This document shows, one piece after another, positions 3,156-41,082 of a DNA stretch of 47,175 nt (its first letter is position 1; each line of letters starts with the position of its first letter). The translations under genes and the position numbers were made by a program. This stretch comes from Macrostomum lignano (taxonomy: Eukaryota), in the NCBI GenBank assembly GCA_002269645.1, contig NIVC01002531.1:1-47175 (forward strand), in the 5' to 3' direction. The notes under the pieces were generated by a model that was not told where the DNA came from, made no database searches, and saw only the letters and a program-made list of their open reading frames with translations.

Positions 3156-4480
3156 TCGTGGCGGTCCCTGCTGGTAACGATTTCGCGGGCATCAGAGCCG
3201 TATTGGGCTGTGTTCCTTCGATCACTTGAGTTAGGTCGGAAGGGACGAGGTTGTTGGTCATTCCTTCGACGACAGTCGGCGGCATAGTGTCCAGGTCGAC
3301 CGCAATGATAACAAGTGGGCTTCTGTTGCATATTAGCGATAGGTGGCTTGGTTTGTGTTTGCAGGGAGGCAACCACCTGCTGATTGGCTTCCTTCGTCGT
3401 TTTTTCTAAGGTAGTTAGACGCTCTGTGAGAGCTTTCAAGTCAGTGCCATCAGAGTCCATGGTGGAGTCGCGGATTTGTTCGGCGCGGATGGCCTTGTTG
3501 ATTAGCGTACTTTCCGTGGTGATATTTTGCTTCAAGAGTTCTCGTTTGATGTAGGGTAGAGCATTGTTGATAGTCGTAGCCATCAGGGTAGCAAGGAAGT
3601 CTCGGTTGCGCTGGTCGATGACAGCTTGGTTCGCGGGTGGTGTTTCCGGACCGGCACCTTCCGGAAATTCTTCCGGTATTTCCGGCATAGCTGACCTGAG
3701 CTTTCGACGAATATCGGTGAAATAAGACAGGAACGGTTCGCCGTACTGTTGTTTCCGGGTTGTTGCATTATGCAGCGTTAGAGCCGAGCCAATGGTTACT
3801 TCCCGAAGGCGTTGAGACAGTGCCTCAATGGTGGCTGGATAAGAGGCTTGGACTGCGGCAGAGAGGCGACTGTATTCGAGTTTAAGAAGGTCATTCAGTA
3901 GTCGCGGGAAGAGCCGAATCTTTGCGTTCTCCGATAGTCCAAAGGAGCGTGTGATCAAGTCGAACTCTTCAGTGAAGGAGCGGAAGTCATGCATTTGGTC
4001 GATTCCTTTCAGGGATTGACGAATTTCAGCAAGAGCAGTAGCTGAGACGGGATGGTTTGATTGCAATTGCAGACTGCGGTTCATAACGTCAGTAAGTTCA
4101 CGGACAGCATTTGTCGCTGCAGCATCAACATGGGGAGCGCCGTCCTGATCAGCCATATCTAGAGTAGATTCTTCAGCAATATCGTTTGGGGCTGGTTGAA
4201 CTGTTTCGTCCGCGTCTGTTAGGATGGAGCTGGGTGCTGGTGAGTGTGCACGGTTGTGTTCAAAATGATCCGCGAGAGGGTTATTAAACTCAACGTTATT
4301 TGGTATAAACAGGTTAGGTACTGGTGAACTATTTCGTGGGAGCTGTTCACCTATTTGGCAGTCAGAAGTTTCTAAATTTTGTTCAGGGGGTCTGTTAATA
4401 TTTGAGCTTTGAAAAACTGGTCCGGAACGTAAATCTCGGACAGGTGTGGTCATTAACAAGAATTCAATCAATAATTTCAA
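3152..4480 (-). CDS. Retrotransposon Gag (capsid-like region plus CCHC zinc knuckle)
   Basis: 442 aa ORF with FEEFDLITRSFGLSENAKIRLFPRLL, RKQQYGEPFLSYFTDIRRKL (major-homology-like region) and CYHCGRPGHYAADC. It continues via a -1 shift into the 927-3155 frame. Confidence 0.85.
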   Translation of the reverse strand: MKLLIEFLLMTTPVRDLRSGPVFQSSNINRPPEQNLETSDCQIGEQLPRNSSPVPNLFIPNNVEFNNPLADHFEHNRAHSPAPSSILTDADETVQPAPNDIAEESTLDMADQDGAPHVDAAATNAVRELTDVMNRSLQLQSNHPVSATALAEIRQSLKGIDQMHDFRSFTEEFDLITRSFGLSENAKIRLFPRLLNDLLKLEYSRLSAAVQASYPATIEALSQRLREVTIGSALTLHNATTRKQQYGEPFLSYFTDIRRKLRSAMPEIPEEFPEGAGPETPPANQAVIDQRNRDFLATLMATTINNALPYIKRELLKQNITTESTLINKAIRAEQIRDSTMDSDGTDLKALTERLTTLEKTTKEANQQVVASLQTQTKPPIANMQQKPTCYHCGRPGHYAADCRRRNDQQPRPFRPNSSDRRNTAQYGSDAREIVTSRDRHD

Positions 4481-14050: not shown

Positions 14051-14557
14051 TCAGGTGCGATAAAAAATTCTAGTTTTCTTGGCCAAGCGTTCGCTTCGCC
14101 TGGGTGACGGCTTGGATTGAACTCCAACCTCAGTCTGTTGCTGTTGTGCTCTCTCAGCTTGTTCTGTTCCCGGTAGTATCTCAGTGTCTGTCGATGACGG
14201 ACGCGTCTGTTGGCCGTCGTCACTTGGACTGCTGCCACCGGGCTTGGAATCCCCCATTTCCGTAGTTCCGTGAGCCTCAGGTACCTCACCGATTCGTAGT
14301 TGATCGAGGTGGGTCTTTAGATTTCGTCCAGTCTCTGTGGTGACGACTGCTGTGTTGCTGCCAAGCATTTTGGCGAATCTCACAGTTCGTGGCTCATGAG
14401 AACTCGATGCACGGTAGATGAGTGATTCTCCTGGGATCCACTTGGACTGAGTGCTGCTCTCCGAGATGGGGAGTCTTATTTGTCTGCCGTTCAACAACTC
14501 GGACGGTGATGCTTGCTGCTTCCCTTTGGCAGCTCTGTAGAACAGTAGAAATCTGTC
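14051..14557 (-). pseudogene. Gypsy integrase C-terminal segment, separated from its core by the LINE
   Basis: DRFL/LFYRAAKGKQQASPSELLNGRQIR...HLDQLR...PRRSERLAKK continues SQRSIDRFL from 20358-20400. No chromodomain seen. Confidence 0.9.
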
Positions 14558-14672
14558 TTGACTTACTTGACTTAGCTGCAGGGGGCGTCCGGCGGATGCA
14601 GCGAGGAGGCGGAGGAGACCGCCCATTCCGCTAGCCCCTGGCGACCAACGACTTCCGTTGAAGTGGTGTCGC

Positions 14673-17600
14673 TCAGGGGGACCCGTCGGTCTCGCCTGCA
14701 GCGCGGTCCTCCTCACCGACGGTGGGGAAGAAATCAGCTCGTCCGGTGTCCCTGAGGTACCGGGCGAGCAGCGGGATGCTCTCGGGCCTGCAAACGTCGG
14801 AGAGAACCGGGTTTGGCCCGAGGTGAGTAAGCCTGGCCCTGGTGAAAACCGGGCAGTGGCAGATAAAATGCTCGGCGTTTTCACTGCCTGAGCGGCAGAA
14901 GGGGCACCGCTCCTCGGGTACTTGGCCCTGAAGGAAGCGGTGGCGAGAGAAGCAGCCATGCCCGGAGAGGGCCATGCTAACTGCTCTGAGGTCTCTGCGG
15001 TTGAGCCTGAGGAGGGCTCTACGCAGGAGAGGAGAGGGACAGGGGACGGCAGCACGGGATTGCCTACAATTCCGGGTGTCGTGCCACCTGCGGAGATGCT
15101 CGGAGTCAGCCCAGCGCTTAACGCGGGAATTGATTACCGAGGCGGGGATGGGGGCACCCGGGCCCGGCCCCAATAGCGCGCCGGCGGAGCCAGCAGGTCA
15201 GCGCGCTCGTTGCCGAGGAAGCCGGCGTGGCCCGGGATCCATCTGAGCTCCACCTGGTTGCCTAGCGCAAGCCCGTTGAGCTGGGTGTTGCAGTCCAGGA
15301 CGGACCTGGAGCTGGCGGTGCTGCGGCAGAGGGCCCGAAGGGCTGCTTGGCTGTCAGAGTGAAAAATAAATTTCCGGCCGCTAAGCTGCCTTCGGCGCAG
15401 CTCTGCCGCGCAGGAGCTGATGGCAAGCACCTCGCTCTGAAAAACACTGGAATTGAGCCCAGTGTGCTGGGAGTAGCTCCACACCACTTCTCCCTTGAAG
15501 AAGACGCAAGCTCTGAAGCCTGAAAGACCATGCCTCATAGAGCCGTCAGTGTAACAGTGGACTTCAGAGTCGCTCCAGCTGTCACTCGCCTCGTGTCGAG
15601 GCTGAATGGTGACCTTGTACCTTTGGCTCAGGAGAAGGGTGGCTGGGATCGAGTCCGTGAGGATGTTGAGCCCGCCACACTCCTCGAGAGCCTTGAGGCA
15701 GAGGTCAGAGTGCGGGATAAGCGACCGCTTCTTAAAGGCCCGCACTTTCTTGAAGGCCACCCCAGCATCCAGAAGACGCCGGGTGCTCTTCGCCGCCTCT
15801 CCTTTGATATAAATATCCAAAGGAGGGGCACAGAGGAAGGCATTCATGCCTTCAAAAGGAGTAGAGGGTGGAGCGCCCATAGTCATGCGGCAGGCTCTGC
15901 CCTGGATTTTGTAGAGAGCGTCGAGGTTGCTCTTGACGCTCAGGCCGCTAGCCCACACGAGGCTGGCGTAACTGATCGAGGGGCGGATGATGGCAGTGTA
16001 AATCCACCACAGCTTCCTGGGGGTGAGCCCCCAGGTGGTGCCCACGGCGCGCCTGATCTGAGCCAGTACAGCCAGGGCTTTTTTGGCTTTAGTTTGAATG
16101 TGCGGAGTCCAGTTAAGCCTGTGGTCCAGAGTGAGGCCCAGGCAGCGGACCTGCTTCTCCATGGAAATATTCTTTCCATAGAGGGTGAGGGGCTTAATGG
16201 TCCAGAGCAGTTTGTTGGTAAACATGACTGCTGTGGTTTTCGACTCTGAGAGTCTAAGGCCACATTGGTCTGCCCAACGCTCCGCTCGTCCCAGAAAGCC
16301 CTGCAGAAGGTCTCTGATGGTATCAACCGAGGGGCCCGCGCATATCGCGGTCACATCATCGGCATAGCCCACCTTGAGAATGGGGTCGTGGAGATCACTG
16401 CAAAGCAACTCATCCATGACCATGTTCCAGAGAACGGGGGTGAGAACGCCGCCCTGGGGGCCCCCTTTCAGGACAGGCACCGAAAGAGAGCTGCCGCTCA
16501 GGTGGGCCACAACAGTGCGGTTTCGGATCATGAACATGATCCACCGGACAAGGTGAGGGTGCGTGGCCCTGGATTCCAGGGCTCTGCAAAAGGCCTCGAA
16601 GATGACGTTGTCGAAGGCCCCCTCAATGTCCAGGAAAAGCGAGAGGGCAAAGCCGCTGCCAAGAACGGCCCTCTCCAGGAAGTCAACAATGACATGGAGA
16701 GCACTCTCGGTTGACCTGCCCGCGCGGAAGGCGTGCTGGTTCTGCGAGAGTGGGAAGCGCTTCAGCTCGACCGAAAGTAGGCGCCAAAGCACCAGTCTCT
16801 CGAGGAGCTTGAGGCAGAAAGAAGTGAGGCTGATAGGCCTGAAGGCCTTCACCGATTGGTAGTCGCTCTTTCCAGGCTTGGGGATAAAGACCACCCGGGC
16901 CTCTCTCCATGCAACTGGTACATAGCCCAGCTCCATACAAGCTCGAAGGAGACGACAGAGCAGGTCCAGGAAGCGGTGGTTTTTCACCGCCTCGTGCAAG
17001 AACGCTGGGTAGATGCCGTCGGGCCCAGGCGCCTTGAACGGGTTAAAGGACCTTGCCGCTCTAATAATGCGGTCTTTGGTGATCATAGACTTTGCTAGGC
17101 CTTGCCCTCCCACTGTGTGGTCGGGCGGGCCCTGCTGAGTCGGAGATTTAGGGAAAAAACTGTTGAGCATGAGCTCTAGAGTCTCTTCCGAACTCTCTGT
17201 GACCGAGCCGTCAGGTCTCTTCACAACAGAGAGTTTAGAAAAACGGTCATTAGTGAGTGCCTTAACCACGCGGGCTACGGGGCGAGAGCCCTCAAGCCCT
17301 TCGCAATATTGGCGCCACTTGGCCGTCTTGGCCCTTCTGACTTGGCCCTTAAACTCGTGGATCGCACGGGTATAGGCCTCTCTGTCAGATGGGTCTTTGG
17401 TTTTGAGCGCTCGCCTTTGGAGGGTCCTGGCTCGGCGCCGAAGGGCCCCGAGCTCTGGGTTCCACCAGGGAGCAGATTTCTTGCCTTTATAGGCCTTTAG
17501 GGGGCAGGCTGCTTCAAAGGCAGTGGTGATCGCCCGCCCAGGGAGGAGGCGAGATCGTCCACCACCTGGCAGTCAGAGAGGTCACTGGGGGGTCAAGATC

Positions 17601-18365
17601 CCGAAGGCCGCGGCTCAGCTTCGAGCCAAAGGCGGCCCAATCGGTGTTCCTGACGTTCCGACTCCAAGTGACCTTAGGCTTTTGCTTGGTCGGCCCAATG
17701 CAAAAGCGGATAAAGCGGTGGTCCGAGAGCGAGTCCTCGTCCCACACTCGCCAGCCCGTAACTGCGGAAAGCAGTCCGGGTGAGGCGATGGTGGTGTCGA
17801 TGACTTCGGCCCACCGCCCATTATTGAACGTTGGTGCATTGCCCACGTTACAGAAGTTGAGGTTAGTGCTGCTGACATAGGCCAGCAGCTCCTCGCCTCT
17901 GCTATTGATGTTCTTGCTGCCCCAATGCAGGTGGTGTGCGTTCACATCCCCTGCAATGAGCAGCTCGAACCGATGGGACGCAGCATAGTCAGTAAGGTTG
18001 ACTAACGCGTCGCAGACAACTGGGGCATCGCCCGGGAAATAGGCAGAAGCTACCAGCACAGGTTTATTGGGAATGAGGTTATTGATTTGAACAACACAGA
18101 TGTCCCCAGTCGAGAGATCAGGTCTCATCCATGCCTCAAAAGCTTTTGCAGCAAAGACCAGAGATCTTGGGCGAGGCTGAGAGCCCGCCATGCAAAAACA
18201 GTGGTAGCCAGATGGCACATTATTTGGCTTACCTTTAGTCATCCAGGGCTCCTGTACGAAGACCAGGCCCGGAAGCTGTTGCTCTGCCGTGCGCATCAGG
18301 TTGACCGACGCCGCCACGCAGTGCTGGGTGTTGATCTGCAGACACCAGGTAGTCGCTGGCATCAT
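14673..18365 (-). pseudogene. LINE ORF2: APE endonuclease, reverse transcriptase, RNase H, CCHC finger (3 frameshifts)
   Basis: APE motifs QINTQH, QEPW, GDVNAHH, SDH (17514-18365). RT motifs FRPISLTSFCLKLLERL, LDIEGAFDNV, PQGGVLTP, YADD, and RNase H YTDGS...WIPGHAG (15134-17269). C-terminal CPFC...HFICHC (14673-15173). Shifts near 17570, 17535 and 15190. Confidence 0.93.
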
Positions 18366-19881
18366 TGCAGATCGGATGTTGCAGCCGCCAGGAGTTCCTC
18401 CTCCTCCTCGGCGCTCACCGGCTTCGGGTCGGGGTCGCCGGTGTCCATGGGCTCTTCTTCAGCAAAAGGCCCCCGATTGGCCGGAAGGCAGTAGGCAGCG
18501 TTCGCCGCCCTTTGCCCACCATCCATGGGGTCCTCCGCCTCAGATTGGCCCAATGCCCTGGAGCAGCCAGCCGCCTGGGCAGGCGGGTCCGTCTCCAGTC
18601 GGCCCTGCCCCGAGGGGTTGGGCCCAGCTGGGACGTCCCCACCCTCCCTGGACGAACTGGTGCGCCTAGGCGTCCCGGCGACCTCTCGCCTCAGCTGGGA
18701 GATTTTGGCGGTACGGACTGCCTCAGCTGCACGCTGGTACAGGCCGCGCCGCTTGGTGCTGCGCGCCGGGCGTCGGTCGCCTCCGCCCTCAGCAGCGCGC
18801 TCAGCTTTGCCCGCGCGGCCGTGCTGCCGGGCAGGGCGGTTTGCTTTGGCAGTCTGAGCAGAGGCTTGCGCCTCGGCCCCGGCCGCCTCCGCATCCCGCC
18901 CGCCCTGCTCACTGCCACGGGGAGGGTCGGCCTCGTAGGAGCGGATGCGCAGCTTCCAAAGGCCGACGTTGATGAAGCTGCCGTGTGGATAACGCCTCAT
19001 CCAGGCGTCCGACAGCCCCAGGATGGCTGTGAAGCCAGTGCCGTCGGTGCGCTTAAGGGTGTCATGCACCACTAGGCCCGCGGCGGGAAGCTCCCGGTTG
19101 ACTGCTAGCAGTCCTTTCCGGAGCTCGTCAGCAGAGGTAACAACGCTCCTGGCCGGGACCCAGATTCGATGCCTCTTGGTCCGGGGGCGCTCGTCCTCTC
19201 TGCAGAAGGCTAGGTTGAGGTCCCAGCTCTGCTCGGGCAGCAGCTCAAGGAGCCGCCGACCCGAGTCAGCATCACTGGGCCAAATGAGAAGGCACGAGTC
19301 CCTCGTCGCATTCGAATGAATGTTCAGAGGCGTGCCCTTCAGAGTTTGCTTCCACAGGAGGCCATCAACGGCACTTCTCACCTGCTTCAGCTGATCGGGA
19401 GACAGGCGCGCGTCCTTTCCCAGGATGACAACCGCCGGTTGCCTCTTTGCCGCATCAGCGTAGGAGGCCCGGGGGTCAGTGGAGCTTTCTTCAGGTGGGC
19501 TGTCCACCCTCCCGGCTGCATCGGCCTCCCTATCCTGGGCAGGGGCTTCCGTGGGCTCGAGGCCCTTTCCGCCACCGCCCCAGACTGGGAAGCTTCCGCT
19601 GCCGCGGGCCGTTGGCCCCTGGCACCGGTTTGGCTTCCGCCCTCCTTGGCCCGCCTCGCCTTGTTAAGTCGACGGCGGGCAGCTCCAGAGGTGGTGCTGC
19701 GTTTCTTAGCAGCTGGAGTAGCAGGTGTCTTCTCGGAGGCACCGCTCAGAGTTGGCTCCACGGGTCTCGCCGAGGCGTCCCCGATGGTAGCAGGTGGTAT
19801 GGCCGAGGAGTCCACGGCCCCAGCCGAGGCCGGAGGCACTGTGTCATCCACAGCCGGTTTGTTACTTCGGTTAGAAGCCAT
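18362..19881 (-). pseudogene. LINE ORF1 (basic N-terminus, DUF4780-like domain), one frameshift
   Basis: ATG at 19881 (MASNRSNKP). A -1 shift leads into the 18362-19507 frame (RHRIWVPARS...LLAVNRELP...INVGLWKLRI). No zinc knuckle. Its TGA overlaps the ORF2 ATG. Confidence 0.8.
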
Positions 19882-20101
19882 TGGCTGGAAGTAAAAAGGT
19901 GGGACTTCCTGCAGAACACAGGCAAAGAGCCGCAAGGCCGCAACCCCAAACCAAGCGGCAGGCCCCCAAAAAGCAAAATACCACCCTGCGGGGGGACCCA
20001 AAAGCGCAAGGGGAACCGTTAGCGACCAGACTACTCCCTGGCCAAGCGTCCATCAGCACGGAGTTACACTGGGACATTAGAGGGTGCGTTTATGGTCACA
20101 C

Positions 20102-20340
20102 CAGGACCCGGCGCCAACGAATCAGCTCGGCAGGGCCCAAGGGGGCCTGCCTTAACACCCACGGGACGAGTACCCTTCGAAGTGCGCCTTGCAAGGTGAA
20201 AACCAGGAGACAGAGTCTCTTGAGCTATCAGCCCGCCAGGGGAGGCAGGTGTGAGCATCGCTGGCTGGGATAAAGGCCATACCAGTCTCATACTGCACAG
20301 ATAGTTCACCACGCCATTACGTGCAGGACCCGGGGTCCTG
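20102..20340 (-). ncRNA. Candidate structured RNA in the LINE 5' UTR (copy A)
   Basis: Conserved motifs and compensatory base changes relative to 35028-35247; see findings. Manual comparison of two sequences only. Confidence 0.55.
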
Positions 20341-20357
20341 GGGGCAACAGCCCCGGC

Positions 20358-21160
20358 GTAGAAATCTGTCAATACTTCTTTGGGATAAACCATTGGTCTT
20401 GATTGTCTCTTTGACGGTTCGCACCATTCGCTCTGCAATGCCGTTGCTCTGTGGATGGTAGGCGGGCGTTGTGATGTGCGAACAGCCAATCTGGGTGAGC
20501 CAGCCGGTCACCGCTTCGCTCACAAAACTAGGGCCGTTGTCTGACACGAGACACTTGGGCACCCCCTGTTGTGAGAACAATCTTCTAAGTCTGGAAATGA
20601 CTGTGTCGGCCTTCATGTCGCTCGTGATGAAGACTTCCGGGTAGCTCGAGTGCGCATCCACAATGATGAGTAGGTACTTGCCCTCTATCGGACCGGCAAA
20701 ATCAATGTGCACTCGCTCCCAGGGGTTGTCAGGTTCTGGCCACGAGTGCCGAAAGTTCTTATTTCTGGACTTGTACGCGTTGCACACGTTGCATCGTCCA
20801 ATGTAGTCAGCGATGTCACGGTCCATCTGTGGCCACCAGAACTGTTCCCTCAAAATTGACTTTGACTTTTCCACCCCAAGGTGCGTTGAGTGTACAGCTG
20901 CCAGGGCAGTTTCTCTCAGGACACGAGGCAATACAATTCTGTTCATTCTGTAAATAATTCCATCATTGACAGTTAGCTCATCTTGAACCTTCGAGTAGCT
21001 GAGTAGGTGTGGGTCGTCAAATAGATTATTGTTAATTATGGCTGCGCCCAGGCATCTGAACTCCGGGTCCTCTCTGGTTGCGTGTGCAATGCGATCCAGC
21101 TGAATTACTCCCGGGTTGTCAGCTTCGAGGAGTCCGATCGATGCTGTCTGTGCATTCGGC
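20358..21160 (-). pseudogene. Gypsy integrase N-terminal and core domains
   Basis: HSTHLG...CNVC zinc finger; D,D35E motifs IDFAGP, SDNGPSF and SNGIAER. Joined to pol by a -1 shift near 21160. Confidence 0.92.
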
Positions 21161-23822
21161 TTAGCGGCACCAGTCGAGATAGCGCATCCGACAGCATTAG
21201 CTTTGATGGTCGATACTGTATGTCATAGTCATAAGCAGCTAGTATGATTGCCCATCGTTGTAGTCGAGCTGAAACTCTGGTGGGCAGCTGTTTGTCTGGC
21301 GCGAATATGTATGTGAGGGGCCGGTGATCAGTTATCAGTGTGAACCTCCGGCCATACAAGAACCGATGGCATCTTTGAATGCACCAAACCAGTGCCAGGC
21401 CTTCACGCTCTATTTGCGAATATTTTGTTTCGGCGTCAGACAGAGTCTTGCTCATGTACAGCACGACTTGACCGCTTTGTGTCAACACTCCGCCCAGAGC
21501 TCGCTGAGAACTGTCGCATTCCAGTTCAATGGGCTTCTCCGGATCAAATATTTGAAGACTCGATTGGTCAGAGAGAGTGACCTTGATTTCGTCAAATGCT
21601 ATTTGACACTCCTTTGTCCACACGAAGTCCTCATTTTTCTTTCTTAGTCGATTGAGAGGCTTGGTCAGTGCAGCTAGGTTTCTGATGAACTTGCCGCTAA
21701 AATTTACGAGACCCAGGAAAGATTCAAGCTCGCCAACGTTCTGCGGTGGTGTCATGTCCTGGATTGCCTTCACTTTGGCTGGGTCCGGCTTGAGCTGATC
21801 TCCTTCCAATAAGTAGCCTAGAAACTTGATCGAAGTCTTGCGGAATTCACTTTTCGCCGTGTTGATCTTCAATCCTTGCTGGTTTAGTCGATGCAATACT
21901 TCCGTCTCACGAACTGCCAATTGTTCTACGCCTTTGCCGCATATCAATATGTCGTCTACGTAGGCAATGACGCCAGGAATTCCTTGTAGGACTTGGCTAA
22001 TGTACCGCTGGAAGATCGCAGGTGCTGTTTTCACTCCGAACGGAAGCTTGTTGAAAGCGAACATCCCAAATGGTGTTGACATTACTGTCAGCTCTTTGGA
22101 AGCTTCATCTAGTGGGATCTGGTGATAAGCTTTCTCTAGGTCCAGACGAGTGTATATCCGGCTGCCAGCAGCAGTTGCAATCACTTCGTCAGGTGCAGGC
22201 ATCGGATATGAATCGTTGATAAGATGAGAATTGATTGTCACCTTGTAGTCGACGCAAAGTCTGAGCTTTCCAGAAGGTTTCTTGACCACGACAATTGGTG
22301 AGGCCCATTCACTGAACTTGACGGGCTTGATGGTGTCTTCTTCAAGCAACCGATCGATTTCATCCTTGACTCCCTGTCTGAGTGCGAAGGGTAGCGGCCT
22401 GGGTTTGCAATGAATTGGAGTGGTTCCTTCCTTGATCTTAAGAGTTACTGGTGGAAATTCGCATGACTGGGTTGGCGATGTGCAGCTGTTGTCTACAGCG
22501 TTTAGCGTGAAATTGAGCTTGTCTCGGCCAACCAGAACAAAGTTCTTCTGCGATTCCACAATGAAGAATGTGATTGGAATGAACTCATCATTGTACTCCA
22601 ACTCAGTGTCGTGTGTTCCAAAGACCTTCATCTGCGTATCAGCGTATGTTGTCAGAACAGTGTCTGTAGGTGTCAGCTTTGGACAACCCAATCGTTTCCA
22701 GATCGTTTTTGACATTACTGAAACTCCTGCCCCAGTATCGATTTGTGCGTTCACGCTAAGCATCGACCCGCTCGTGTGTCTGAGCCTAACAGGCACGGTG
22801 TAGCTATCAACGGGATGTCGAATGTGAAAACAATCCTCCTGTTCAGCTTCGCTTGCATCTACAAAGCTTGTGGTCCTTGGCCACACTGCAGCTCGCCTAA
22901 ACTGACCAGATGCTGACGGGCTTTTGAACGATTTTCGGCCTTTGCCAAAACCAGTTGATTTCGTTTTGCAAACTGTTGCGAAGTGGTTTTGCATGCCACA
23001 TTTGTTGCACGTTTTTCCTTTCGCAGGACACCCTCCATTGGAGCCATGCATTGTGCCACATCTGCCACACTTGGAGCTTGTAGAGTGGGAGCCTCTGGTC
23101 ACCGATGCTGAAATTTTCATTACTTCAGAAGACTGCGGCTGACTGGTGCAACCCTTTAGTATTTGCGTTTGTGATAGGTTCTGGTGCGCCTCAGCGATGT
23201 TGATAGCTGTCTCAAACGTGAGAGTGCTGAAGTCCTGTTCCAATAACTTGCTGATGGCCACCTTGTCATTCAAACCGAATACGAGCTGATCTCTCAGTCT
23301 CTCATCTCTGGATAGGCCAAACTGACACTTGTCTGCCTGCATGCAGAGTTGCTGTGCATACTCACGAATGCTCATTGATGCCGTGCGAGTGATATGCTGG
23401 AAATTGAATCTCTCAGCCATGACGAACGTCTTTGGTTCCAGGATGCTGGCCAGTAGTTTGGTCAGTTCATCGAAGCTCTTTTCTCCCGGCTTCTTGGGAG
23501 CGGCTCGATCTGCCAATGCGTCGTACAGCTTGGTGCTGAGCTTCATCAGCAGCAGCTTGTTTTTCGTGTCGTCCTGCCAGCCGTTGAGTTCGCTGCACAG
23601 TGTGAATCGGTCCAACCACCTCTGGAAGTTCGAACTTTCATCGAGTTTTTCGATGTCAACTTGCTGTCCTCTCGATACTTGTGCGCTTGGGTTCTGCGCT
23701 GTCGCTGTTGCCGACTTTGTCGCTTGGACTGATTTCGACGAGATCGCAAGCGGTGGTACTTTGTCGCTCGAAACCGTTTTACCAACTCCTTTAGTTGGCG
23801 ATGCTGGCGTACTTCCAGGCAT
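21105..23822 (-). CDS. Gypsy Gag-Pol: gag with two Cys/His knuckles, aspartic protease, RT, RNase H
   Basis: RLRDQLVFGL; CGRCG..H...CPAKGKTCNKCGMQNHFATVC; IDTGAGVSV; LRLCVDY; YVDD; ECDSS...YSQIEREGLA...TDHRPL...DALSR. Confidence 0.95.
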   Translation of the reverse strand: MPGSTPASPTKGVGKTVSSDKVPPLAISSKSVQATKSATATAQNPSAQVSRGQQVDIEKLDESSNFQRWLDRFTLCSELNGWQDDTKNKLLLMKLSTKLYDALADRAAPKKPGEKSFDELTKLLASILEPKTFVMAERFNFQHITRTASMSIREYAQQLCMQADKCQFGLSRDERLRDQLVFGLNDKVAISKLLEQDFSTLTFETAINIAEAHQNLSQTQILKGCTSQPQSSEVMKISASVTRGSHSTSSKCGRCGTMHGSNGGCPAKGKTCNKCGMQNHFATVCKTKSTGFGKGRKSFKSPSASGQFRRAAVWPRTTSFVDASEAEQEDCFHIRHPVDSYTVPVRLRHTSGSMLSVNAQIDTGAGVSVMSKTIWKRLGCPKLTPTDTVLTTYADTQMKVFGTHDTELEYNDEFIPITFFIVESQKNFVLVGRDKLNFTLNAVDNSCTSPTQSCEFPPVTLKIKEGTTPIHCKPRPLPFALRQGVKDEIDRLLEEDTIKPVKFSEWASPIVVVKKPSGKLRLCVDYKVTINSHLINDSYPMPAPDEVIATAAGSRIYTRLDLEKAYHQIPLDEASKELTVMSTPFGMFAFNKLPFGVKTAPAIFQRYISQVLQGIPGVIAYVDDILICGKGVEQLAVRETEVLHRLNQQGLKINTAKSEFRKTSIKFLGYLLEGDQLKPDPAKVKAIQDMTPPQNVGELESFLGLVNFSGKFIRNLAALTKPLNRLRKKNEDFVWTKECQIAFDEIKVTLSDQSSLQIFDPEKPIELECDSSQRALGGVLTQSGQVVLYMSKTLSDAETKYSQIEREGLALVWCIQRCHRFLYGRRFTLITDHRPLTYIFAPDKQLPTRVSARLQRWAIILAAYDYDIQYRPSKLMLSDALSRLVPLSRMHRQHRSDSSKLTTRE

Positions 23823-26660: not shown

Positions 26661-27338
26661 GGATCGGTAGGAAATAGAGAGGATCGATGGGAACGGGTGG
26701 GGCATGGGGGTACATTGCGAGTGCATGAGCAGCCTATGATGATGAGGACCCAGCAGCAATCGGGTGCCTCTGCGTCACGATCTCCAAGAATAGTTCTTTC
26801 ACCCTGTTTCACGAAATTCGACACGGGAAATAGAAAATTATCTTGGAACTTTGAGAAGGCGCTCAATTCCCCCAATCTCCATAATATATTACTGGCGAGC
26901 CCGCCACGGTCAGCGATGGAATCGCAAAGGGCAAAATGAAGCGCCATGGACAGCGGAGGCTGAGCGAGCAGGTCCTGTGCGGCATAAAAACTTCACATTA
27001 GTCACCGCAGTTCTCCGCTGACAATTTTCATTGAAGCAGGGGGCTGCGGGAGGCTCTGATTGAATTGAGAGGGCCGCGGAGTTTATCTCGGGCCCGCTCC
27101 GATAATGGATCGGCCATTCGGGGAGCAGGTCCGGTCTTATCGGCGCAAAAATTATTCCCATTTCGACTGCGGTGTCTGTCCGAGATATTTCTTCTTTCAT
27201 TTTTTGAGCTGAAGTTTTTCCTGGGGAGAGCGGCACGTGACCTGCCAAGGCCGCCGCGCCGGAGCTGGGGAGTGGGGATCGAGCTCGCGCTGCCGTCATT
27301 CGCTGGCCGAGAGGGGACGCAGATACCGTAGCAAGAAA

Positions 27339-28152
27339 ATGCGCAGGAAATTTCCCCTGTTCTTCCCCTGCACTGCGAGCGCATCAGCTGCTCCGGGCTT
27401 CAAGAAAGCGAGACGGCAAGGGGGTTCGAGCAGCCCGGACTGCAGGGTCCCGACGCATCGGAGCGCAGCCCGAGTCATGTACACCACCGTCAGCAGGCGC
27501 GAGTCCGACCTGCCGGTCCGACGCGAGCGGGTGCCGTTCCGCGGCGCCAACCGGCCGTTGACGGCGCTGCGGGAGCCGTACGCCCAGCCGTTCGCCAGCG
27601 GCCGCTACACGACACCCGCCGCCCGCATTAAGATGTCCAAGTCGCAGAAGCGCAAAAACCTCCGACGCCTGAGGCGCAAGAAGCGGATTAAGGAGACGGT
27701 CAACTGCTGCAAGCACTTTCTGGCCTTTATGTTTTCCAACCTGGGCCTCTCCAGCCTCATCATCGCCTACACCGTGATCGGAGGCGTCATGTTCCAGAGC
27801 CTCGAGTACCAGCAAGAGATGAGCACGCGGCAGGCTGTGCAGAAGTACTTCAACGACACCGTCACGAATATCACTGGCGATATCGAGGAGAGCATCCAGC
27901 AGCGCTGCCTGAGCCTCGGCCAGCAGCTCGTCAACGTCAGCGATGGAGGCTGGCGGCTGCTGTACGGCATCTGCCAGCGCCTGGAGGTGAAGCCACTGAC
28001 CAACCCACGGCTGGAGGCGCACCTGAAGGAGTACCACCGGAGGCTCGTTATCTTCATCAACATCGACGGCTGGAACGGCCGGTTCGACGAGGAAGTCAAC
28101 TGGAGCTTCTCCGGGGCGCTGCTGTACGTAGTGACGGTCATCACCACCATCG
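27339..28152 (+). CDS. Two-pore-domain K+ channel (K2P/TWIK family), exon 1: M1, cap, P1
   Basis: FLAFMFSNLGLSSLIIAYTVIGGVMFQSLE...WSFSGALLYVVTVITTI(G); donor GTGAG at 28153. The start could be ATG 27339, 27477 or 27633. Confidence 0.88.
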
Positions 28153-28557
28153 GTGAGCTGCGGTGAACAGAGTGCGCAGTCAAAAATGGTCGCATATTAA
28201 AAATTATTCACAGTATCTCAGAGGCTCCTTAAGGCTAAGGCGCGAATGCAGGGTCATTATAGGTCAAACTAATGATACTTGTAGATCAAATTTCATTAGA
28301 ATGAAAAAACGACTGCAATGATTTTCTGTGCAACTTTGAAAGCTTTGTACTTCAAAAATCTGCGTGATCTGACCAATATTCCCATTTTCGAATCCAAGAG
28401 ACAACTGGGCATGGTAACTGTGCTTGACCTTGATATGACCTTGAAATCATAGGGCGTCCACAGCTCAGCCCTTGAAGCTTTTTGGGTTTCATTGATTTTC
28501 CAGTTTAACTCGAATTTCACTTTAATAATCAAATTTCGGTGAACGCGAACTCCCCAG

Positions 28558-29994
28558 GTTACGGACAGGTGGTGCCCAAGACGCACAAAGGCTACCTGCT
28601 CACCATGCTGTACGCCTTCTTCGGGATCCCGCTGGTCTTCCTCTACCTCAACAACGTTGGCGACTACCTGGCTGACGCCTTCCGCCTGCTCTACCGGGAC
28701 GCCTTCCGGCCCGCCTGGCGCCGCATCTTCCGCCGGCGGACCCGAGAGCGGCTCAGCGCCTTCGCCTCCAACTGCCGCCGCCTTGCGCTGATCCCGCTGG
28801 TTGCCGCCGCCTCCGGCTTGTCCCGCCTGTGCGAGAGGCTCTGCCGCGTCTGCGCCACCGAGGTCGTGGGACCTGAGGACGAGGAAGAGGAGGAAAGCGA
28901 AGAGGTGCTCGTGCTGGATGAAGCTGCAAGCGTGCAGGTGGTCGCGACAGCTCCAAGTCCGCCGCCGCCGCCATCTCCGCCACCATCGCCCTCGCTGTCG
29001 CAGCTGCCTTCGCCGCTGGCGCTGCCCAAGTCGCGTGGCGCCGCCCTGCCGCCCTTCATGAGCAGCAACGCCTCCATCCGAGTCGCCTACGTGATGGCCC
29101 GCGTGCTGCCCGCCCGGCCCACGCCGCCTGCGCTGGACCTGACGGGAATCCCCTACCACTCCGAGCCGCCGCGCCTCGCGAACGGCACTCGTCGCCCCGG
29201 AGACTCTGCTGATGAAGCGGGGGCCACAGACGTCGATGCCAACCTGCTCGCGCAGGTGCAGACGCCGATTTCGCAGAGGCCGATCCGCGACTGGACCAGC
29301 GAGGAGCTTGAGCAGGTGCCTCTCATCGGCTGGTCCGACATCGACTGCGAGCTCATGGAAGCTGCCGCCGCGGCTGCCGCAGCCGCCGCCACTTCGGCCG
29401 CTGCCGCCAGACGCGAAGCCGACGTGTTCGGGCGGGACATTGGAGGCGGTGACGAGGACGCGCTGGAGTCGGCGGACCGGCCCGGCAGGCTGCTCAAGAG
29501 CTCCTCCGTGCCATCAACCCTCGCTGTCGCAGCTCCGACGGCTTCTGCACGCCTGCGGTCGCTAGGCGAGTCGTCGGGCTATGAGTCGGGCGCCATGCCG
29601 CCTCCGCGAGGCCGCCACTCGGAGCCGGCGCAAGTTGGCAGCCGTCGAGGGCCGCGGGCGGCGCCGGCCGCGTCTCCAGAGTGGCTGGAGTTCCTGCGCC
29701 AGCGCCAGGAATCGAACCCCATGCTGCGCCGCTGCAGCTACGTCAGCGTGCACGAGCCGTCGAGCGTTTCGACCAGCACGCAGCCGGAGGAGGACGAAGA
29801 CGACAAAGACTCCATGCAGGGCCTGACGCTGCGCCAGGTGACGGTGCCGCTTTCCCTCTCCGTGTCCGTCATGATCCTCTACATCATATTCGGCGCGCTG
29901 ATATTCACCATCTGGGAGGACAAAGACTACGTGAAGTGGTCCTACTTCTGCTTCATCACGCTGAGCACAATCGGCTTCGGTGACATTGTGCCGG
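28558..29994 (+). CDS. K2P channel exon 2: end of P1, M2, very long cytoplasmic loop, M3, P2
   Basis: Acceptor ccccag at 28557 completes TIGYG. YAFFGIPL (M2); SYFCFITLSTIGFGDIVPG (P2). Donor GTGAG at 29995. Splice phases are consistent. Confidence 0.92.
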
Positions 29995-30112
29995 GTGAGC
30001 AGGCTGCTGCAGTTTTAACTCTCAGTGGAGAATTCAGTAGAAAATCTTGAGCATCAAAGTAATTTGCAATTTACTTTTGAGATTGCTAATGTGACAGCTA
30101 TTGCAACCGCAG

Positions 30113-34540: not shown

Positions 34541-35009
34541 GCTGCACAAGGCTGTGAGCTCAGAGGCCCAGTCAGTGTGTGATGGAACCGCAGTCTGTGT
34601 GTTGAGACCGGAAGTGTTTCAAACCGGTATTTAAACCCTTCGCTGTCTGAATATCTAGAAACCATTGAGCACATGTTGCCTCATGCTACTGTTAATACTC
34701 TGGTATGTCAGCTTTCTCGCAGATCACGGCCACAATGGACCTCCTGCTGAGAAGTCATCTGGTCTGTGCAACAGGAGCCCGACTGATCAGCCCTAAACAG
34801 CTAAGCAGAGTCCCCAATCCCCCCAGTCCCCTATAGGCCGTTACACCCCGCCCCCATGCTCAAATGCTCCCGAACGTCTGGATGGAGCCCCTGCTTCGGT
34901 AGAGTAAGAATGGGGGAATTCTAGAGTAAGAACGCCTGCTCATAAGGGGCGACTCCCAACAGCGCCAAAGGCAACAGGCAGGGCGGACACACAGCTACCG
35001 AATCAATCA

Positions 35010-38000
35010 GGGCTGGCGATCTGCAACCAGGAGCCTGGCATGTAATGTTGGGCTCAGCACACCTGTGTAGCATGAGACAAACCAGGCTTGCGAGCTAAGG
35101 CCTGCGATCCTACACAACTGCACCCCCTCTATTCTGGTGCAGGAATGGTAGGGGAACTCTCCAAGCTGACTCACAAGCCGACCCAGGGGTTCGCGTCTCG
35201 CATGTGTTCAAGGCAGCTTCAGGGCTGCTGGACTGACTGGGCTCCTGCGGCGGCAAGCCATCCGTGGCCTTGGCTTCTGTCTTGGCAGCTTTGGGTACTG
35301 GCTCGGCCCGGAAGTGAACCTGTGCGTATCAGGTACCTCTGACCACGGCTCTGAGGAGCAAGTATCACCCTCTGACCTTAACAGGGTATGCGGGTATGCG
35401 GCCAGTCCGCAGGCTCCGGGACAGCCTCTTGTCCCCTCAAGGGCCCAGTGTAGCAACGCGCTGATGGTCCTTTGGTTTGGCCTCTGGGTTCTCCAAGCCG
35501 GGCTCTTAGCCAGGGAGTTTCTCGATTGCTGGCCTTCGACTGGGGTACGGAGCTGGAAAACCTGTTTATCTACATGGAGGACGAGCGACCCCGGACACAC
35601 CGGCACCGTGCCTGGATTCCGGCTCGCAGCTCCATCCCCAAGGCCGATGAGCTGCGTCGCCTGCTAGTGGCTACCAATCCGGAGCTGCCGGCCAATGGCG
35701 TCGTACGAGGCTTAGTTCACGAGACCATCTCCAAGCCGGGCGGAGACGGTTTCACGGCTATTCTTTGACTGTCAGATAGTTGGATGCTCCGCTATCCGGA
35801 CATGTCCCTCATCTCTGTCGGGCTGATGCAGATTCAAATCTTCAGTTTTGAGTCTGACGCCACCCGCCCACCGCCCCCGGAGATCAATCGAGTGGGAGTG
35901 GCGAGTGGGAGCTCTGCCGGGGGGGGACGCCCAGGAAAAGAAGCTCCCGTTCGTCACGATCCCTCTGAGGACGTGGACCCCGTGAAAGCCGCAAAAGCTG
36001 CAGCAACAGGCGGACATGGAAAGGGCCGTAAACCCGCCCAGAACACTATCCACTCTGATTTGACTCAGTGCACGAAACAGCGGCTGGACACTGCCAAGGC
36101 TAACAACCGCAACAACCCCCAGCCCAGTGTCACCACTGCGGCCCCCAGGAAGACCGGGCCGAGCCTTCAACCATGGAGACCATCCGGGAAGAGTCCATGG
36201 AACTGGAGTCGGGAACCATCGGTGAGGCAGAAGAGACAGCTCTCTCGGCACAACTCGCCCTGAGCCAGCAGGAAGCTGCACGGAACACTCGTGGAATCGC
36301 CGGAGTGGAAATACTGCAGCTTAACCTGCACAACTGCATCGCGGCCTCGACCAACCTGATGCAGGTGGCAAACTTCGCGAAACCGGGCATCATACTGCTT
36401 CAGCAGCCCTGGACGAAGAAAGGTAAGATTCCGAATATTCCTGCTGGTTTTGACTGTTTTCAGGACCCCCCAAAACCCCAGAGCAGCCATTTTCGTGTCT
36501 ACCCATCTATCTCAAAGCTTGGCACAGACCGGACCGCAGAGAGACCTCTGTGTCATTCAGTCCAACCACATAATCACCAAACGCACGGTCATTATCGCCT
36601 CGATTTATATCCCTGGCAATGGCCCGCGGTTCCATCCACCCTAACCTCCCTCGTGGACTACTGCTCTGACCGCAGGTTCGAGCTGTTGGTGGCGAGCGAC
36701 GTCAACGCCCACCACACCCACTGGGGCAGTAATACCTCCAACAGCAGAGGCGAGGAACTCCTTGCTTACATCTGCACCACCAATAAGCGGGAAACCAGGA
36801 AAGCCAAGTCCGACAAGTGGCACCAACACTGCGCGGAATTAGAAGGCACCCGCCATACTTCACGCGTGGTCAAGGCTCTCACCCTCGACAAAAGGTCAAA
36901 GCTCTCAGTCATTAAAAGACCGGACGGCCGGCTCGCTGAGAACCCCGGGGAATCGCTGGACATCATGCTCACCAGCTCTTTCCCACTTGCCGCGCCGCAG
37001 CTAGGCCCACCGGACCACTCTCTGGGCGGACAGATCCTGGCTTCGACCATCATTACTAGAGAGAGGACGACTCGCGCCGCAAAACCCTTCTCTCCCTTCA
37101 AGTCACCGGGACCTGACAACATTTATCCTGCCTTCCTCCATGAGGCAGTTAAAAATGACAGGTTTCTCGGTCTCCTTTGCAACCTGTTCAAGGCCAGCAT
37201 TACCCTCGCGTACGTGCCAAAAGCCTGGCAAGAGGCCACGGTAGTCTTCATACCCAAGCCATGGAAGGGAGACTATCACTCTGCTAAAGCTTACCGCCCT
37301 ATCAGTCTGACGTCTTTCTTCCTCAAACTGAACGGCTGGTGCTCTGGTGCCTCCTCCTCGTGGAGCTGAGGAACTCCCCGCCCTCCCCCAGCCAGAACGC
37401 CTTTTGTCCTGGACGCTCCATCAAAAGTGCGCTGCATGCCATTGTCGACAAGCTGGAGCGCGCCGTGCTCGGCAGTGGATATGCGCTGTCGCTTTTCCTC
37501 GACATTGATGGTGCTTTCAATATTGTGTGCTCTTTGAAGCCTTTAAGCGGGCCCTGGAATTCCGGGCACGCACGAGCACCTCACCCGCTGGATCATGTAC
37601 TTGTACATGGTCTCCATCGGACTGCCATCTCGCACCTCCTTGGACACTCCCGCTCTGTGGAGGTCCAGAAAGGCGACCGCAAGGTGGGGTCATCAGCCCG
37701 ATTCTCTGGAACTTGTTCATGGATGAGCTGCTCTGCAGCCCGCATCCGGACCCAGTTCAGAGGTCGGCTATACGGATGATTTTACCCCCACTGCCGCTGG
37801 ACCATCAGCCGCGGTCCTCAGAGACCTCCAAGTCAATTCATCCACCGTGCCGAGCGCTGGGAACACAGCTGCGGTCTCAGGTTCTCTGAGTCTAAAACCG
37901 TGGCTATTATGTTCGCCAGCCGCCGAAACTGGAGGATCAAACCGCTCTCCTATGGCAAACCGTTACCATGGAGAGGCAAACCAGATGTCTGGGCGTCACC

Positions 38001-40970: not shown

Positions 40971-41082
40971 GTGAGTAAAGCTTTTGAAGTTCTATTTAAG
41001 ACCAACACTCCTTAGAGGAGCTATAATGAAAACGAGTTAACATCACAAATCAATAACTCGGTGTCAAATTATCAAATCAAAG

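What the first reader, a model, noticed from the sequence alone, without database searches (positions are those of the whole stretch)
20102..20340. Conserved, covarying, apparently pseudoknotted ~230 nt RNA in the 5' UTRs of two divergent LOA-like LINEs (candidate new ribozyme or IRES-like element)
Seen: the intact LINE (A, minus, 20340-20102) and the decayed LINE (B, plus, 35028-35247) have otherwise unalignable UTRs. They share motifs in the same order and near-identical spacing: CAYGUAAUG; CUGUGYAGYAUGAGAC; GCGAU; GGGUWC.CGUCYCG; GUGUU(C)AAGGCAG-hairpin-CUGCY; CUGA. Six helices appear in both, five with compensatory changes. (i) Closing stem CAGGACCC/GGGUCCUG vs CAGGAGCC/GGCUCCUG. (ii) UGGC/GCCA vs AGGC/GCCU just before GCGAU. 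(iii) GCU/AGC vs CCU/AGG, each enclosing an inner hairpin. (iv) ACACC/GGUGU vs ACACA/UGUGU, which crosses (iii) and so implies a pseudoknot. (v) CGAA/UUCG vs CCAG/CUGG directly after CUGA (two changes). (vi) GAGAC with GUCCC or GUCUC, not compensatory. Established: HDV-like self-cleaving ribozymes occur in 5' UTRs of several non-LTR clades, including R2, RTE and the LOA element Baggins. Inference: I could not fit the canonical HDV, hammerhead or twister topology, so this may be an undescribed ribozyme, translation element or packaging signal.
Basis: partly seen in the sequence, partly recalled or inferred. Interest (0 to 1): 0.8.

Follow-up and report, generated by a model that had tools for sequence, protein, structure and literature searches.

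The report
HDV-like ribozyme fold in flatworm LINE
The conserved RNA at the start of two flatworm (Macrostomum lignano) LINE retrotransposons is real and structured, and it fits the known hepatitis-delta-like self-cleaving ribozyme fold with a large extra domain, so it is probably a new member of a known ribozyme family and not a new kind of ribozyme.

Summary
Both loci carry the listed motifs in the same order, while the UTRs are otherwise hardly alignable. A third, independent copy (Logan contig L001) carries the same element.

The interpretation needs revising. The RNA does fit the HDV-like nested double pseudoknot. P3 is 3 bp and closes a 7-nt L3 (U..NCGU). The P1 3' strand follows P3 directly. 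P1.1 has 1-2 bp. P4 is a hairpin. J4/2 reads CUGA/CUGC and contains the candidate catalytic C (20125 in A, 35233 in B). The P1 5' strand lies 6 nt before a conserved AAUG.

On a plain MAFFT alignment of the three copies, 43 of 45 core cells pair and 7 of 15 pairs show double changes.

Points against: no Rfam match; copy A has a P1 mismatch; a roughly 34-nt leader upstream of the predicted cleavage site lies inside A's target-site duplication; only three sequences; no cleavage data.

Verdict: likely a new member of the HDV-like ribozymes of non-LTR retrotransposons (confidence about 0.6). Moderately interesting.

The parts
14558..20358 (-). LINE A: full length, APE-RT-RNase H type, with frame disruptions
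   Evidence: Flanked by 12-bp TSDs GACAGATTTCTA at 20370-20359 and 14557-14546. Pfam domains. It is inserted in the integrase of a Ty3/Gypsy element.
20325..20358 (-). Leader upstream of the predicted cleavage site (A). Contains a GGGGC/GCCCC hairpin, the 5' strand of the closing stem S (20340-20333), and an A-specific duplicate of CGGGUCCU.
   Evidence: Lies inside the TSD, so it is part of the retrotransposed RNA. Homologous leader in B. Analogous G-rich leader hairpins in L014 and L015.
20319..20324 (-). P1 5' strand GCACGU (A). Predicted cleavage lies between 20325 and 20324.
   Evidence: Same offset (6 nt before AAUG) as the perfect P1 strands of B and L001. A itself pairs at 5 of 6 positions, with one A x G mismatch.
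20180..20318 (-). J1/2 peripheral domain (139 nt). Closing helix P1.2: 20310-20305 with 20200-20195. Y1: UGUG 20299-20296 with CACA 20253-20250. Y2: AGUAU 20294-20290 with AUGCU 20258-20254. Ha: hairpin within 20284-20262. Hc: 20249-20244 with 20237-20232. Hd: 20219-20207.
   Evidence: The MFE fold of the isolated domain has the same architecture in A and L001, and in B at +1.1 kcal/mol. Helix sequences differ between copies.
20176..20179 (-). P2 5' strand CGAA (A). A possible extension P2a pairs GGCGC 20188-20184 with GCGCC 20114-20110.
   Evidence: P2 is 100% paired in the three copies, and 3 of 4 pairs carry double changes.
20163..20175 (-). P3 GGG (20175-20173), L3 UACUCGU (20172-20166), P3' CCC (20165-20163)
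   Evidence: GGGUNNNCGUCYCG is conserved in A, B and L001.
20155..20162 (-). P1 3' strand GUGGGU (20162-20157) and P1.1 GU (20156-20155), which pairs with AC of L3
20129..20151 (-). P4 hairpin GGCAGGCCC-CCUU-GGGCCCUGCC, preceded by J1.1/4 UAA (20154-20152)
20118..20128 (-). J4/2 GAGCUGA (20128-20122; candidate catalytic C at 20125) and P2 3' strand UUCG (20121-20118)
20102..20109 (-). 3' strand of closing stem S (GGGUCCUG). It pairs with 20340-20333.
   Evidence: There is one compensatory C-G/G-C exchange relative to B.
35028..35035 (+). B: 5' strand of closing stem S (CAGGAGCC). It lies upstream of the predicted cleavage site.
35038..35043 (+). B: P1 5' strand GCAUGU. Predicted cleavage lies between 35037 and 35038.
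   Evidence: It is the only upstream 6-mer that pairs perfectly with the P1 3' strand.
35044..35181 (+). B: J1/2 peripheral domain (138 nt)
35182..35241 (+). B: ribozyme core. P2 CCCAG 35182-35186; P3 35187-35189; L3 UUCGCGU 35190-35196; P3' CUC 35197-35199; P1' GCAUGU 35200-35205; P1.1 GU 35206-35207; J1.1/4 UCAA 35208-35211; P4 35212-35229; J4/2 GGACUGA 35230-35236 (C at 35233); P2' CUGGG 35237-35241.
35240..35247 (+). B: 3' strand of closing stem S (GGCUCCUG). It overlaps the last 2 nt of P2'.

Best explanation
The element is an HDV-like (delta-family) self-cleaving ribozyme fold at the 5' end of a small clade of Macrostomum APE-RT-RNase H LINEs.

Order along the RNA: a roughly 34-nt leader; P1 5' strand; a 139-163 nt structured J1/2 peripheral domain closed by a helix P1.2; P2; P3; L3; P3'; P1'; P1.1; J1.1/4; P4; J4/2; P2'. 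A long-range stem S pairs the leader with the sequence just 3' of the ribozyme.

Inferred mechanism, by analogy with characterised HDV-like ribozymes: the conserved C of J4/2 (20125 in A, 35233 in B) and a metal ion held by the L3 U/G pair would cleave the backbone immediately 5' of the first G of P1 (between 20325 and 20324 in A, and between 35037 and 35038 in B). This would free the LINE RNA from upstream sequence and leave a 5'-OH end. The J1/2 domain would bring the outer ends of P1 and P2 together, as shown for large HDV-like ribozymes.

Shown here: the motifs, the helices and their covariation in three copies.

Inferred: the HDV-like assignment, catalysis, the cleavage site, and any role in processing or translation. 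Copy A, with its P1 mismatch and broken ORFs, may be an inactive version.
For: 1) A descriptor written from general HDV-like rules hits A, B and L001 at the homologous site. The rules are: 3-bp P3; 7-nt L3 with the pattern U....G.; P1' adjacent to P3'; P1.1; a P4 hairpin; a C in J4/2; P2' pairing with the bases directly 5' of P3; and a 6-7 bp P1. The descriptor gives no hit in the first 1.2 kb of seven more distant LINE contigs. It hits only 0.13-0.4% of dinucleotide shuffles of each UTR.

2) On a plain MAFFT alignment of the three copies, not fitted to any structure, the 15 core pairs (P1, P2, P3, P1.1) are paired in 95.6% of cells. Seven pairs carry changes on both sides. None of 500 shuffles reaches the observed covariation score. 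Slid controls give 24-50% pairing and at most one double change.

3) In B and L001 the only perfect partner of the P1 3' strand lies at the same offset, 6 nt before the conserved AAUG.

4) The unpaired bases that are conserved sit where the family needs them: L3 U at position 1 and CG at positions 5-6, the J4/2 C, and an A three bases after it in A and B (requirements from PMC13635239 and PMC3774820).

5) P4 and the J1/2 helices are formed by different sequences in each copy. Large structured J1/2 domains are documented (PMC4908430; 216-498 nt in silkmoth R2, PMC3774820).

6) The HDV-like nested fold plus P2 is as stable as, or more stable than, the unconstrained MFE in L001 and B.

7) Contig L001 begins exactly at the predicted first base of P1.

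8) HDV-like ribozymes are established at the 5' ends of several non-LTR clades (PMC3774820, PMC3185411).
Against: - No Rfam family, including the HDV-like ones, matches A, B or L001 even at E <= 10.
- Only three sequences were available, and the structure was derived from them.
- Copy A has an A x G mismatch in P1, only 4 bp in P2, and an HDV-like fold about 5 kcal/mol worse than its MFE.
- L001 has G-C in place of the usual G.U at the cleavage site, and a C where A and B have the J4/2 A.
- The P1 5' strand can also form a local hairpin in every copy (A: CUGCAC/GUGCAG; L001: CCUGC/GCAGG).
- In A the roughly 34-nt leader upstream of the predicted cleavage site lies inside the TSD. The RNA that was copied had therefore not been cleaved there. 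Characterised LINE ribozymes of this family, apart from R2, cleave at the element's 5' end.
- Related LINEs L014 and L015 share the leader and the GCAYGUA motif but have no HDV-like core. That motif may therefore be conserved for another reason.
- No cleavage data exist.
Confidence: 0.6

Rival explanations
1. A structured but non-catalytic 5' UTR RNA. The helices would be selected for another job, such as internal ribosome entry for ORF1, binding of the element's own proteins (packaging, cis-preference), or RNA stability. The HDV-like topology would be either coincidental or a catalytically dead descendant.
For: - Retention of the leader in copy A, inside its TSD.
- No Rfam hit.
- The strongly conserved J1/2 domain is larger than the catalytic core.
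- Further conserved hairpins lie downstream in the UTR.
- The P1 5' strand has a competing local hairpin.
Against: The conserved unpaired nucleotides coincide with the catalytic-core positions of HDV-like ribozymes. The core helices P1, P1.1, P2 and P3 are kept by compensatory changes in exactly that topology. A pure scaffold has no obvious need for a 3-bp P3 with a fixed 7-nt U..NCGU loop and a conserved C next to P2.
Confidence: 0.25
2. The shared motifs are DNA-level elements of an internal promoter (initiator and downstream elements, transcription-factor sites). The apparent helices would be by-products of G+C-rich sequence.
For: - LINEs of this type need internal promoters.
- GCAYGUA lies about 26-31 nt from the element's 5' end in A, L014 and L015. 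That position is typical of downstream promoter elements (established knowledge of insect LINE promoters).
- Folding z-scores of the whole region are not significant.
Against: Seven of 15 core pairs, and most J1/2 helices, change on both strands while staying complementary. Slid controls lose the pairing. DNA motifs do not predict this. The promoter reading can explain GCAYGUA and the leader, but not P2, P3, P4, Hc or Y1.
Confidence: 0.07
3. A new class of self-cleaving ribozyme or a new pseudoknotted RNA, built on helix iv (ACACC/GGUGU).
For: In A the internal strand ACACCUGC pairs with GUGGGUGU over 8 bp, and in B ACACA pairs with UGUGU. No known Rfam family matches.
Against: Helix iv has 0 of 5 pairs in L001, and helix vi shows no covariation. 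CACA is better explained as the partner of UGUG/GUGG in the J1/2 arm, where 3 of 4 pairs carry double changes. The whole core fits a known fold.
Confidence: 0.04

Closest known systems
HDV-like ribozymes of non-LTR retrotransposons (R2, R4/Dong, RTE/drz-Agam-2, Baggins, L1Tc)
   Same: - Location in the 5' UTR of a LINE.
- Nested double-pseudoknot order of P1, P2, P3, P1.1 and P4.
- 6-bp P1, 3-bp P3, 1-2 bp P1.1, variable P4.
- Conserved C in J4/2 and conserved U...CG in L3.
   Different: - No sequence or CM match to any Rfam HDV-like family.
- The predicted cleavage site is about 34 nt inside the element in copy A, not at its 5' end.
- An extra long-range stem pairs the leader with the 3' flank.
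- The host is a free-living flatworm LINE with APE, RT and RNase H domains.
- Activity is untested.
Large HDV-like ribozymes with a structured J1/2 (P1.2) peripheral domain (mosquito drz-Agam-2-1, PMC4908430; silkmoth R2 with J1/2 of 216-498 nt, PMC3774820)
   Same: A long insertion between P1 and P2 that is closed by a helix. This helix brings the distal ends of P1 and P2 together.
   Different: Here the J1/2 domain is a multi-helix junction with blocks of strong sequence conservation (YAUGAGA, CGAU, CACA, CAAGSCG). In silkmoth R2 the J1/2 loops share only small regions of identity.
L1Tc Pr77 / L1TcRz dual element (PMC3383444, PMC3185411)
   Same: A LINE 5' end in which the same stretch may serve as an internal promoter at the DNA level and as an HDV-like ribozyme at the RNA level. 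Upstream sequence modulates folding.
   Different: L1TcRz is 77 nt and cleaves at +1 of the element. Here the element is about 220-240 nt and has a leader. Promoter function is only conjecture.
Twister-variant ribozymes at the 5' end of Schistosoma mansoni Perere-3 (PMC8501958)
   Same: A flatworm LINE with a 5' self-cleaving ribozyme.
   Different: A different ribozyme family and a different LINE clade (RTE). No twister match was found here.

Membership tests
HDV-like self-cleaving ribozymes | Nested double-pseudoknot order: P1 5' strand, J1/2, P2, P3, L3, P3', P1', P1.1, P4, J4/2, P2' | tested here: met
   The descriptor scan hits A, B and L001 at the homologous site.
HDV-like self-cleaving ribozymes | P1 of 6-7 bp whose 3' strand directly follows P3' (PMC3774820, PMC4908430) | tested here: met
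   B and L001 have 6 of 6 pairs. A has 5 of 6, with one A x G mismatch. Two positions carry double changes. About a quarter of R2 ribozymes also have P1 mismatches (PMC3774820).
HDV-like self-cleaving ribozymes | 3-bp P3 closing L3, with the U/G pair that holds the catalytic metal and a conserved C-G in L3 (PMC13635239, PMC3774820, PMC3185411) | tested here: met
   GGG / U..NCGU / CYC is present in all three copies.
HDV-like self-cleaving ribozymes | P1.1 of 1-2 bp between L3 and the bases after P1' (PMC3185411, PMC13635239) | tested here: met
   A has AC/GU and L001 has CU/AG; both pairs are compensatory. B has one pair plus U:U. A U:U pair in P1.1 occurs in an active ribozyme (PMC13635239).
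HDV-like self-cleaving ribozymes | Catalytic C in J4/2 immediately before the P2 3' strand, with an A three bases later contacting P3 (PMC13635239) | tested here: inconclusive
   The C is conserved in all three copies (CUGA, CUGA, CUGC). The A is present in A and B but is C in L001. The catalytic role cannot be tested here.
HDV-like self-cleaving ribozymes | G.U wobble at the cleavage-site end of P1 | tested here: inconclusive
   A and B have G.U; L001 has G-C.
HDV-like self-cleaving ribozymes | Match to a curated covariance model (Rfam HDV-like families) | tested here: not met
   No ribozyme family matches at the gathering score, nor at E <= 10, in the window, in the two loci, or in the L001 core. 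These models are narrow and cannot span a 140-160 nt J1/2.
HDV-like self-cleaving ribozymes | Mg2+-dependent site-specific self-cleavage that leaves a 5'-OH on the first base of P1 | not testable with these tools
   The only indirect hint is that contig L001 starts at the predicted first base.
LINE 5'-terminal processing ribozymes | [quoted passage not shown] | tested here: not met
   In A the predicted site (20325/20324) is 34 nt inside the element, whose 5' end at 20358 is fixed by the TSD. Contig L001 is consistent with the rule.
Hammerhead, twister, twister-sister, pistol, hatchet, hairpin, VS ribozymes | Match to the family covariance model | tested here: not met

The most novel reading that the evidence does not exclude
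The element may be a regulated HDV-like ribozyme that decides the fate of the LINE RNA. In one conformer the P1 5' strand is held in a local hairpin and the capped leader is kept. This RNA stays whole and serves as the retrotransposition template, as copy A's leader shows. In the other conformer P1 forms and the RNA removes its own cap and leader. The conserved J1/2 domain then drives cap-independent translation of ORF1. The same DNA would also carry the internal promoter.
Probability: 0.12. Interest if true: 0.7.

Novelty: new member of a known kind. Interest (0 to 1): 0.45.

Why it matters
If cleavage is confirmed, HDV-like ribozymes would extend to free-living flatworm LINEs of the RNase H-bearing group. 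It would also provide a natural example with an unusually conserved multi-helix J1/2 domain.

It would raise a concrete question as well. The element keeps a leader upstream of its own cleavage site, which means that cleaved and uncleaved RNAs have different fates.

For genome annotation, the result shows that curated covariance models miss large-J1/2 members of this family. A descriptor or pseudoknot-aware search finds them.

If cleavage is not confirmed, the region is still a well-supported structured LINE 5' UTR of unknown role.

Tried and rejected
- Rfam, at gathering scores and at E <= 10, on the window, both loci, eight related contigs and the L001 core: no ribozyme family.
- More homologues. 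Two ORF1-based protein searches returned almost nothing.
- Motif-pattern scans of metagenome, GTDB genome and viral contigs returned only chance bacterial hits.
- Look-ups of a window ORF and of a M. lignano UniRef paralogue were not on record. The P0003 contig has no DNA available.
- The contigs of P0005 and P0006 are 5'-truncated.
- Among 123 relatives, no B-like protein has a usable contig.
- More distant LINE contigs (L003, L004, L005, L014, L015) have no HDV-like core, even with a relaxed descriptor.
- Alternative P1 5' strands were rejected because their positions are not homologous between copies. These were GCUCAC, ACCUGC and GCGCAC in A; CACAAGC in B; CCUGC near position 150 in L001.
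- P2a extension (GGCGC/GCGCC in A, GCCG/CGGC in L001): kept as tentative. In B it would cross stem S.
- The 5' end of contig L003 was tested as a P1 strand: no partner found.

Full report
**Setting**

The window is Macrostomum lignano DNA. The RT/RNase H ORF of the minus-strand LINE is 100% identical to a UniRef protein of that flatworm.

LINE A runs from 20358 to 14558 on the minus strand. It is flanked by a perfect 12-bp target-site duplication, GACAGATTTCTA, at 20370-20359 and 14557-14546. It interrupts the integrase of a Ty3/Gypsy element, whose reading frame resumes after the LINE. A encodes ORF1, an AP-endonuclease, RT and RNase H. It is not intact: ORF1 is split over two frames, and ORF2 is broken between the endonuclease and RT parts.

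LINE B (plus strand, from about 35000) is heavily decayed. A and B are only about 37-43% identical in protein, apart from one 66% block. BLASTN aligns only short blocks of their UTRs.

**Observation**

A third copy was obtained through the closest database relative of A's ORF2. This is contig L001 from a Logan assembly. Its ORF2 is 64% identical to A and 47% to B. L001 carries the same motifs in the same order within its first 240 nt. The shared element is therefore real and older than the A/B split.

No further member could be obtained. ORF1 searches, pattern scans of metagenome, genome and viral collections, and extra contig look-ups found nothing, or contigs that lack the 5' UTR.

**What it is**

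With three sequences, the 3' third of the element reads as the core of an HDV-like ribozyme.

| Element | A | B | L001 |
|---|---|---|---|
| P3 | GGG/CCC | GGG/CUC | GGG/CCC |
| L3 | UACUCGU | UUCGCGU | UCUCCGU |
| P1 3' strand | GUGGGU | GCAUGU | GCAGGC |
| P1.1 (pairs with L3 positions 3 and 2) | GU | GU | AG |
| J1.1/4 | UAA | UCAA | GCAA |
| J4/2 motif | CUGA | CUGA | CUGC |
| P2 (5' strand directly precedes P3) | CGAA/UUCG | CCCAG/CUGGG | CUCAGA/UCUGAG |
| P1 5' strand | GCACGU | GCAUGU | GCCUGC |

- P3 is 3 bp and closes the 7-nt loop L3.
- The P1 3' strand follows P3' with no spacer.
- P4 is a hairpin with a different sequence in each copy.
- The P1 5' strand lies at the same place in all three copies, the 6 nt before a conserved AAUG. 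In B and L001 it is the only upstream 6-mer that pairs perfectly with the P1 3' strand. In A it has one A x G mismatch.

**Tests of the fold**

A descriptor written from the general rules of the family hits A, B and L001 at the homologous position. It hits nothing in the first 1.2 kb of seven more distant LINE contigs, even when relaxed. It hits 0.13-0.4% of dinucleotide shuffles of each UTR. In the whole window it gives three other, unrelated hits per 94 kb of both strands. A hit alone is therefore weak evidence; three homologous hits are not.

On a plain MAFFT alignment, not fitted to any structure, the 15 pairs of P1, P2, P3 and P1.1 are formed in 43 of 45 cells.
- Seven pairs carry changes on both sides.
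- None of 500 shuffles reaches the observed covariation score.
- Sliding the 3' partners by 1-3 columns drops pairing to 24-50%, with at most one double change.

These figures come from three sequences, and the structure was derived from those same sequences. They show consistency, not statistical proof.

- Helices ii and iii hold.
- Helix vi never covaries.

**The large middle part**

Folded alone, this segment adopts the same architecture in A and L001, and in B at 1.1 kcal/mol above its optimum.
- A closing helix: A GGUGAA/UUCACC; L001 GCAGGGCGC/GCGCUCUGC; B UCAGC/GCUGA.
- A long arm in which UGUG/CACA (L001: GUGG/CCAC) and AGUAU/AUGCU (L001: GGUAU/AUGCC) pair around an internal loop that carries GAGA.
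- An apical hairpin.
- A second hairpin with three unrelated sequences: CCUGCC/GGCGGG, CUGCACC/GGUGCAG and UCCGCA/UGCGGA.
- A third hairpin.

The motifs CUGUGYAGYAUGAGAC, GCGAU and CACA are thus strands of this domain.

Large HDV-like ribozymes with a structured J1/2 domain that pinches P1 and P2 together are documented (PMC4908430). J1/2 loops of 216-498 nt occur in silkmoth R2 ribozymes (PMC3774820).

With P1 and P3 enforced and P2 added, the HDV-like fold is as stable as, or more stable than, the unconstrained optimum in L001 and B. In A it is about 5 kcal/mol worse.

**Comparison with the family**

Features met:
- the topology;
- a 6-bp P1;
- a 3-bp P3;
- a P1.1 of 1-2 bp (a U:U pair, as in B, occurs in an active ribozyme; PMC13635239);
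- the L3 U/G pair and the conserved CG;
- the conserved C in J4/2.

Inconclusive: the G.U pair at the cleavage site and the A three bases after the C are present in A and B but not in L001.

Not met:
- No curated Rfam model matches, even at E <= 10 on a 91-nt query. Those models are narrow and cannot bridge the long J1/2.
- The cleavage site does not coincide with the element's 5' end.

**The main anomaly**

In A, about 34 nt precede the predicted cleavage site: a G-rich hairpin plus the 5' strand of the closing stem. These bases lie inside the target-site duplication, and B has the homologous leader. The RNA that gave rise to copy A therefore had not been cleaved there.

Two related LINE contigs (L014 and L015, ORF2 44% identical to A) also have a leader hairpin followed by GCAYGUA. 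There it forms a local hairpin with two compensatory changes. They lack any HDV-like core.

In every copy the P1 5' strand can also form such a local hairpin. The leader and the GCAYGUA motif may therefore serve another purpose, such as an internal promoter or an alternative conformer.

Contig L001, in contrast, starts exactly at the predicted first base of P1 and reads through the LINE's 3' end into flanking DNA. This fits a cleaved RNA or a leaderless family. The library type is unknown, and another contig (L003) also starts a few bases before an AAUGG. I treat this only as a hint.

**Verdict**

The element is best explained as an HDV-like ribozyme fold with a large, conserved peripheral domain, in the 5' UTR of a small clade of flatworm LINEs (confidence about 0.6). 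The main rival is a structured RNA of this shape that does not cleave, or no longer cleaves (about 0.25). Purely DNA-level motifs (about 0.07) or a new ribozyme class (about 0.04) are unlikely.

It is a new member of a known kind. The leader upstream of the cleavage site and the conserved J1/2 domain are the features worth following up. The decisive test is a simple in vitro cleavage assay with core mutants, plus a survey of 5' ends of genomic copies.

Noticed in passing
window 20359-20946 and 14051-14557 (minus strand); Gypsy pol ORF 21105-23822: LINE A sits inside the integrase gene of a Ty3/Gypsy LTR retrotransposon. The integrase frame (..SIDRFL | LFYRAA..) resumes after the LINE. The 12-bp TSD is perfect, which suggests a young insertion.
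   Followed up: partly
window 35045-35098 (B); L001 8-61: In B and L001 the conserved AAUG opens a 17-codon upstream ORF that ends at the UAA of the conserved GCUAAGG and includes the AUG of YAUGAGA. The peptides differ apart from a few residues. In A the frame stops after 3 codons.
   Followed up: partly
window 20075-20020 (minus strand); L001 about 430-480: Downstream of the ribozyme-like element, the UTRs of A and L001 share another conserved block (CCCAGUGU..CGUGCUG..). It contains a hairpin CCAGGGAGUAGUCUGG / CCGGGGAGUAUUCCGG with a compensatory change. B is less clear.
   Followed up: partly
window 20332-20325 versus 20111-20102 (minus strand): Copy A carries CCGGGUCCUG twice: once in the leader just before P1, and once as the 3' strand of the closing stem. 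B lacks the leader copy. The duplicate gives A a strong local hairpin (CAGGAC-CCCG-GUCCUG) that competes with the long-range stem.
   Followed up: no
L014 78-145; L015 71-140: Two JGI metagenome LINE contigs (ORF2 44% identical to A) share a 5' G-rich hairpin and GCAYGUA with A and B. They fold it into a local hairpin with two compensatory changes (UGCACG/CGUGUA versus UGCAUG/CAUGCA), followed by GGGCAAAGCC. No HDV-like core was found.
   Followed up: partly
window 14558-14581 (minus strand); L001 5945-5962: A and L001 end with the same 3' motif, CUGCAGCUAAGUCAA. In A it is followed by a short AAGUCAAGU-type repeat before the TSD.
   Followed up: no
window 34900-34935: A direct repeat TAGAGTAAGAA...TAGAGTAAGAA lies about 90 nt upstream of B's element. 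It may be the tail of another insertion. The 5' boundary of B could not be fixed.
   Followed up: no
window 39882-42192 (+), 27237-30050 (+), 927-4480 (-): Other content of the window: two adjacent ORFs with DUF5054 matches (a likely host gene with an intron or frame break); ORFs with ion-channel (Ion_trans_2) matches; and a pair of minus-strand ORFs, one with a CCHC zinc knuckle (Gag-like), which points to another retroelement.
   Followed up: no
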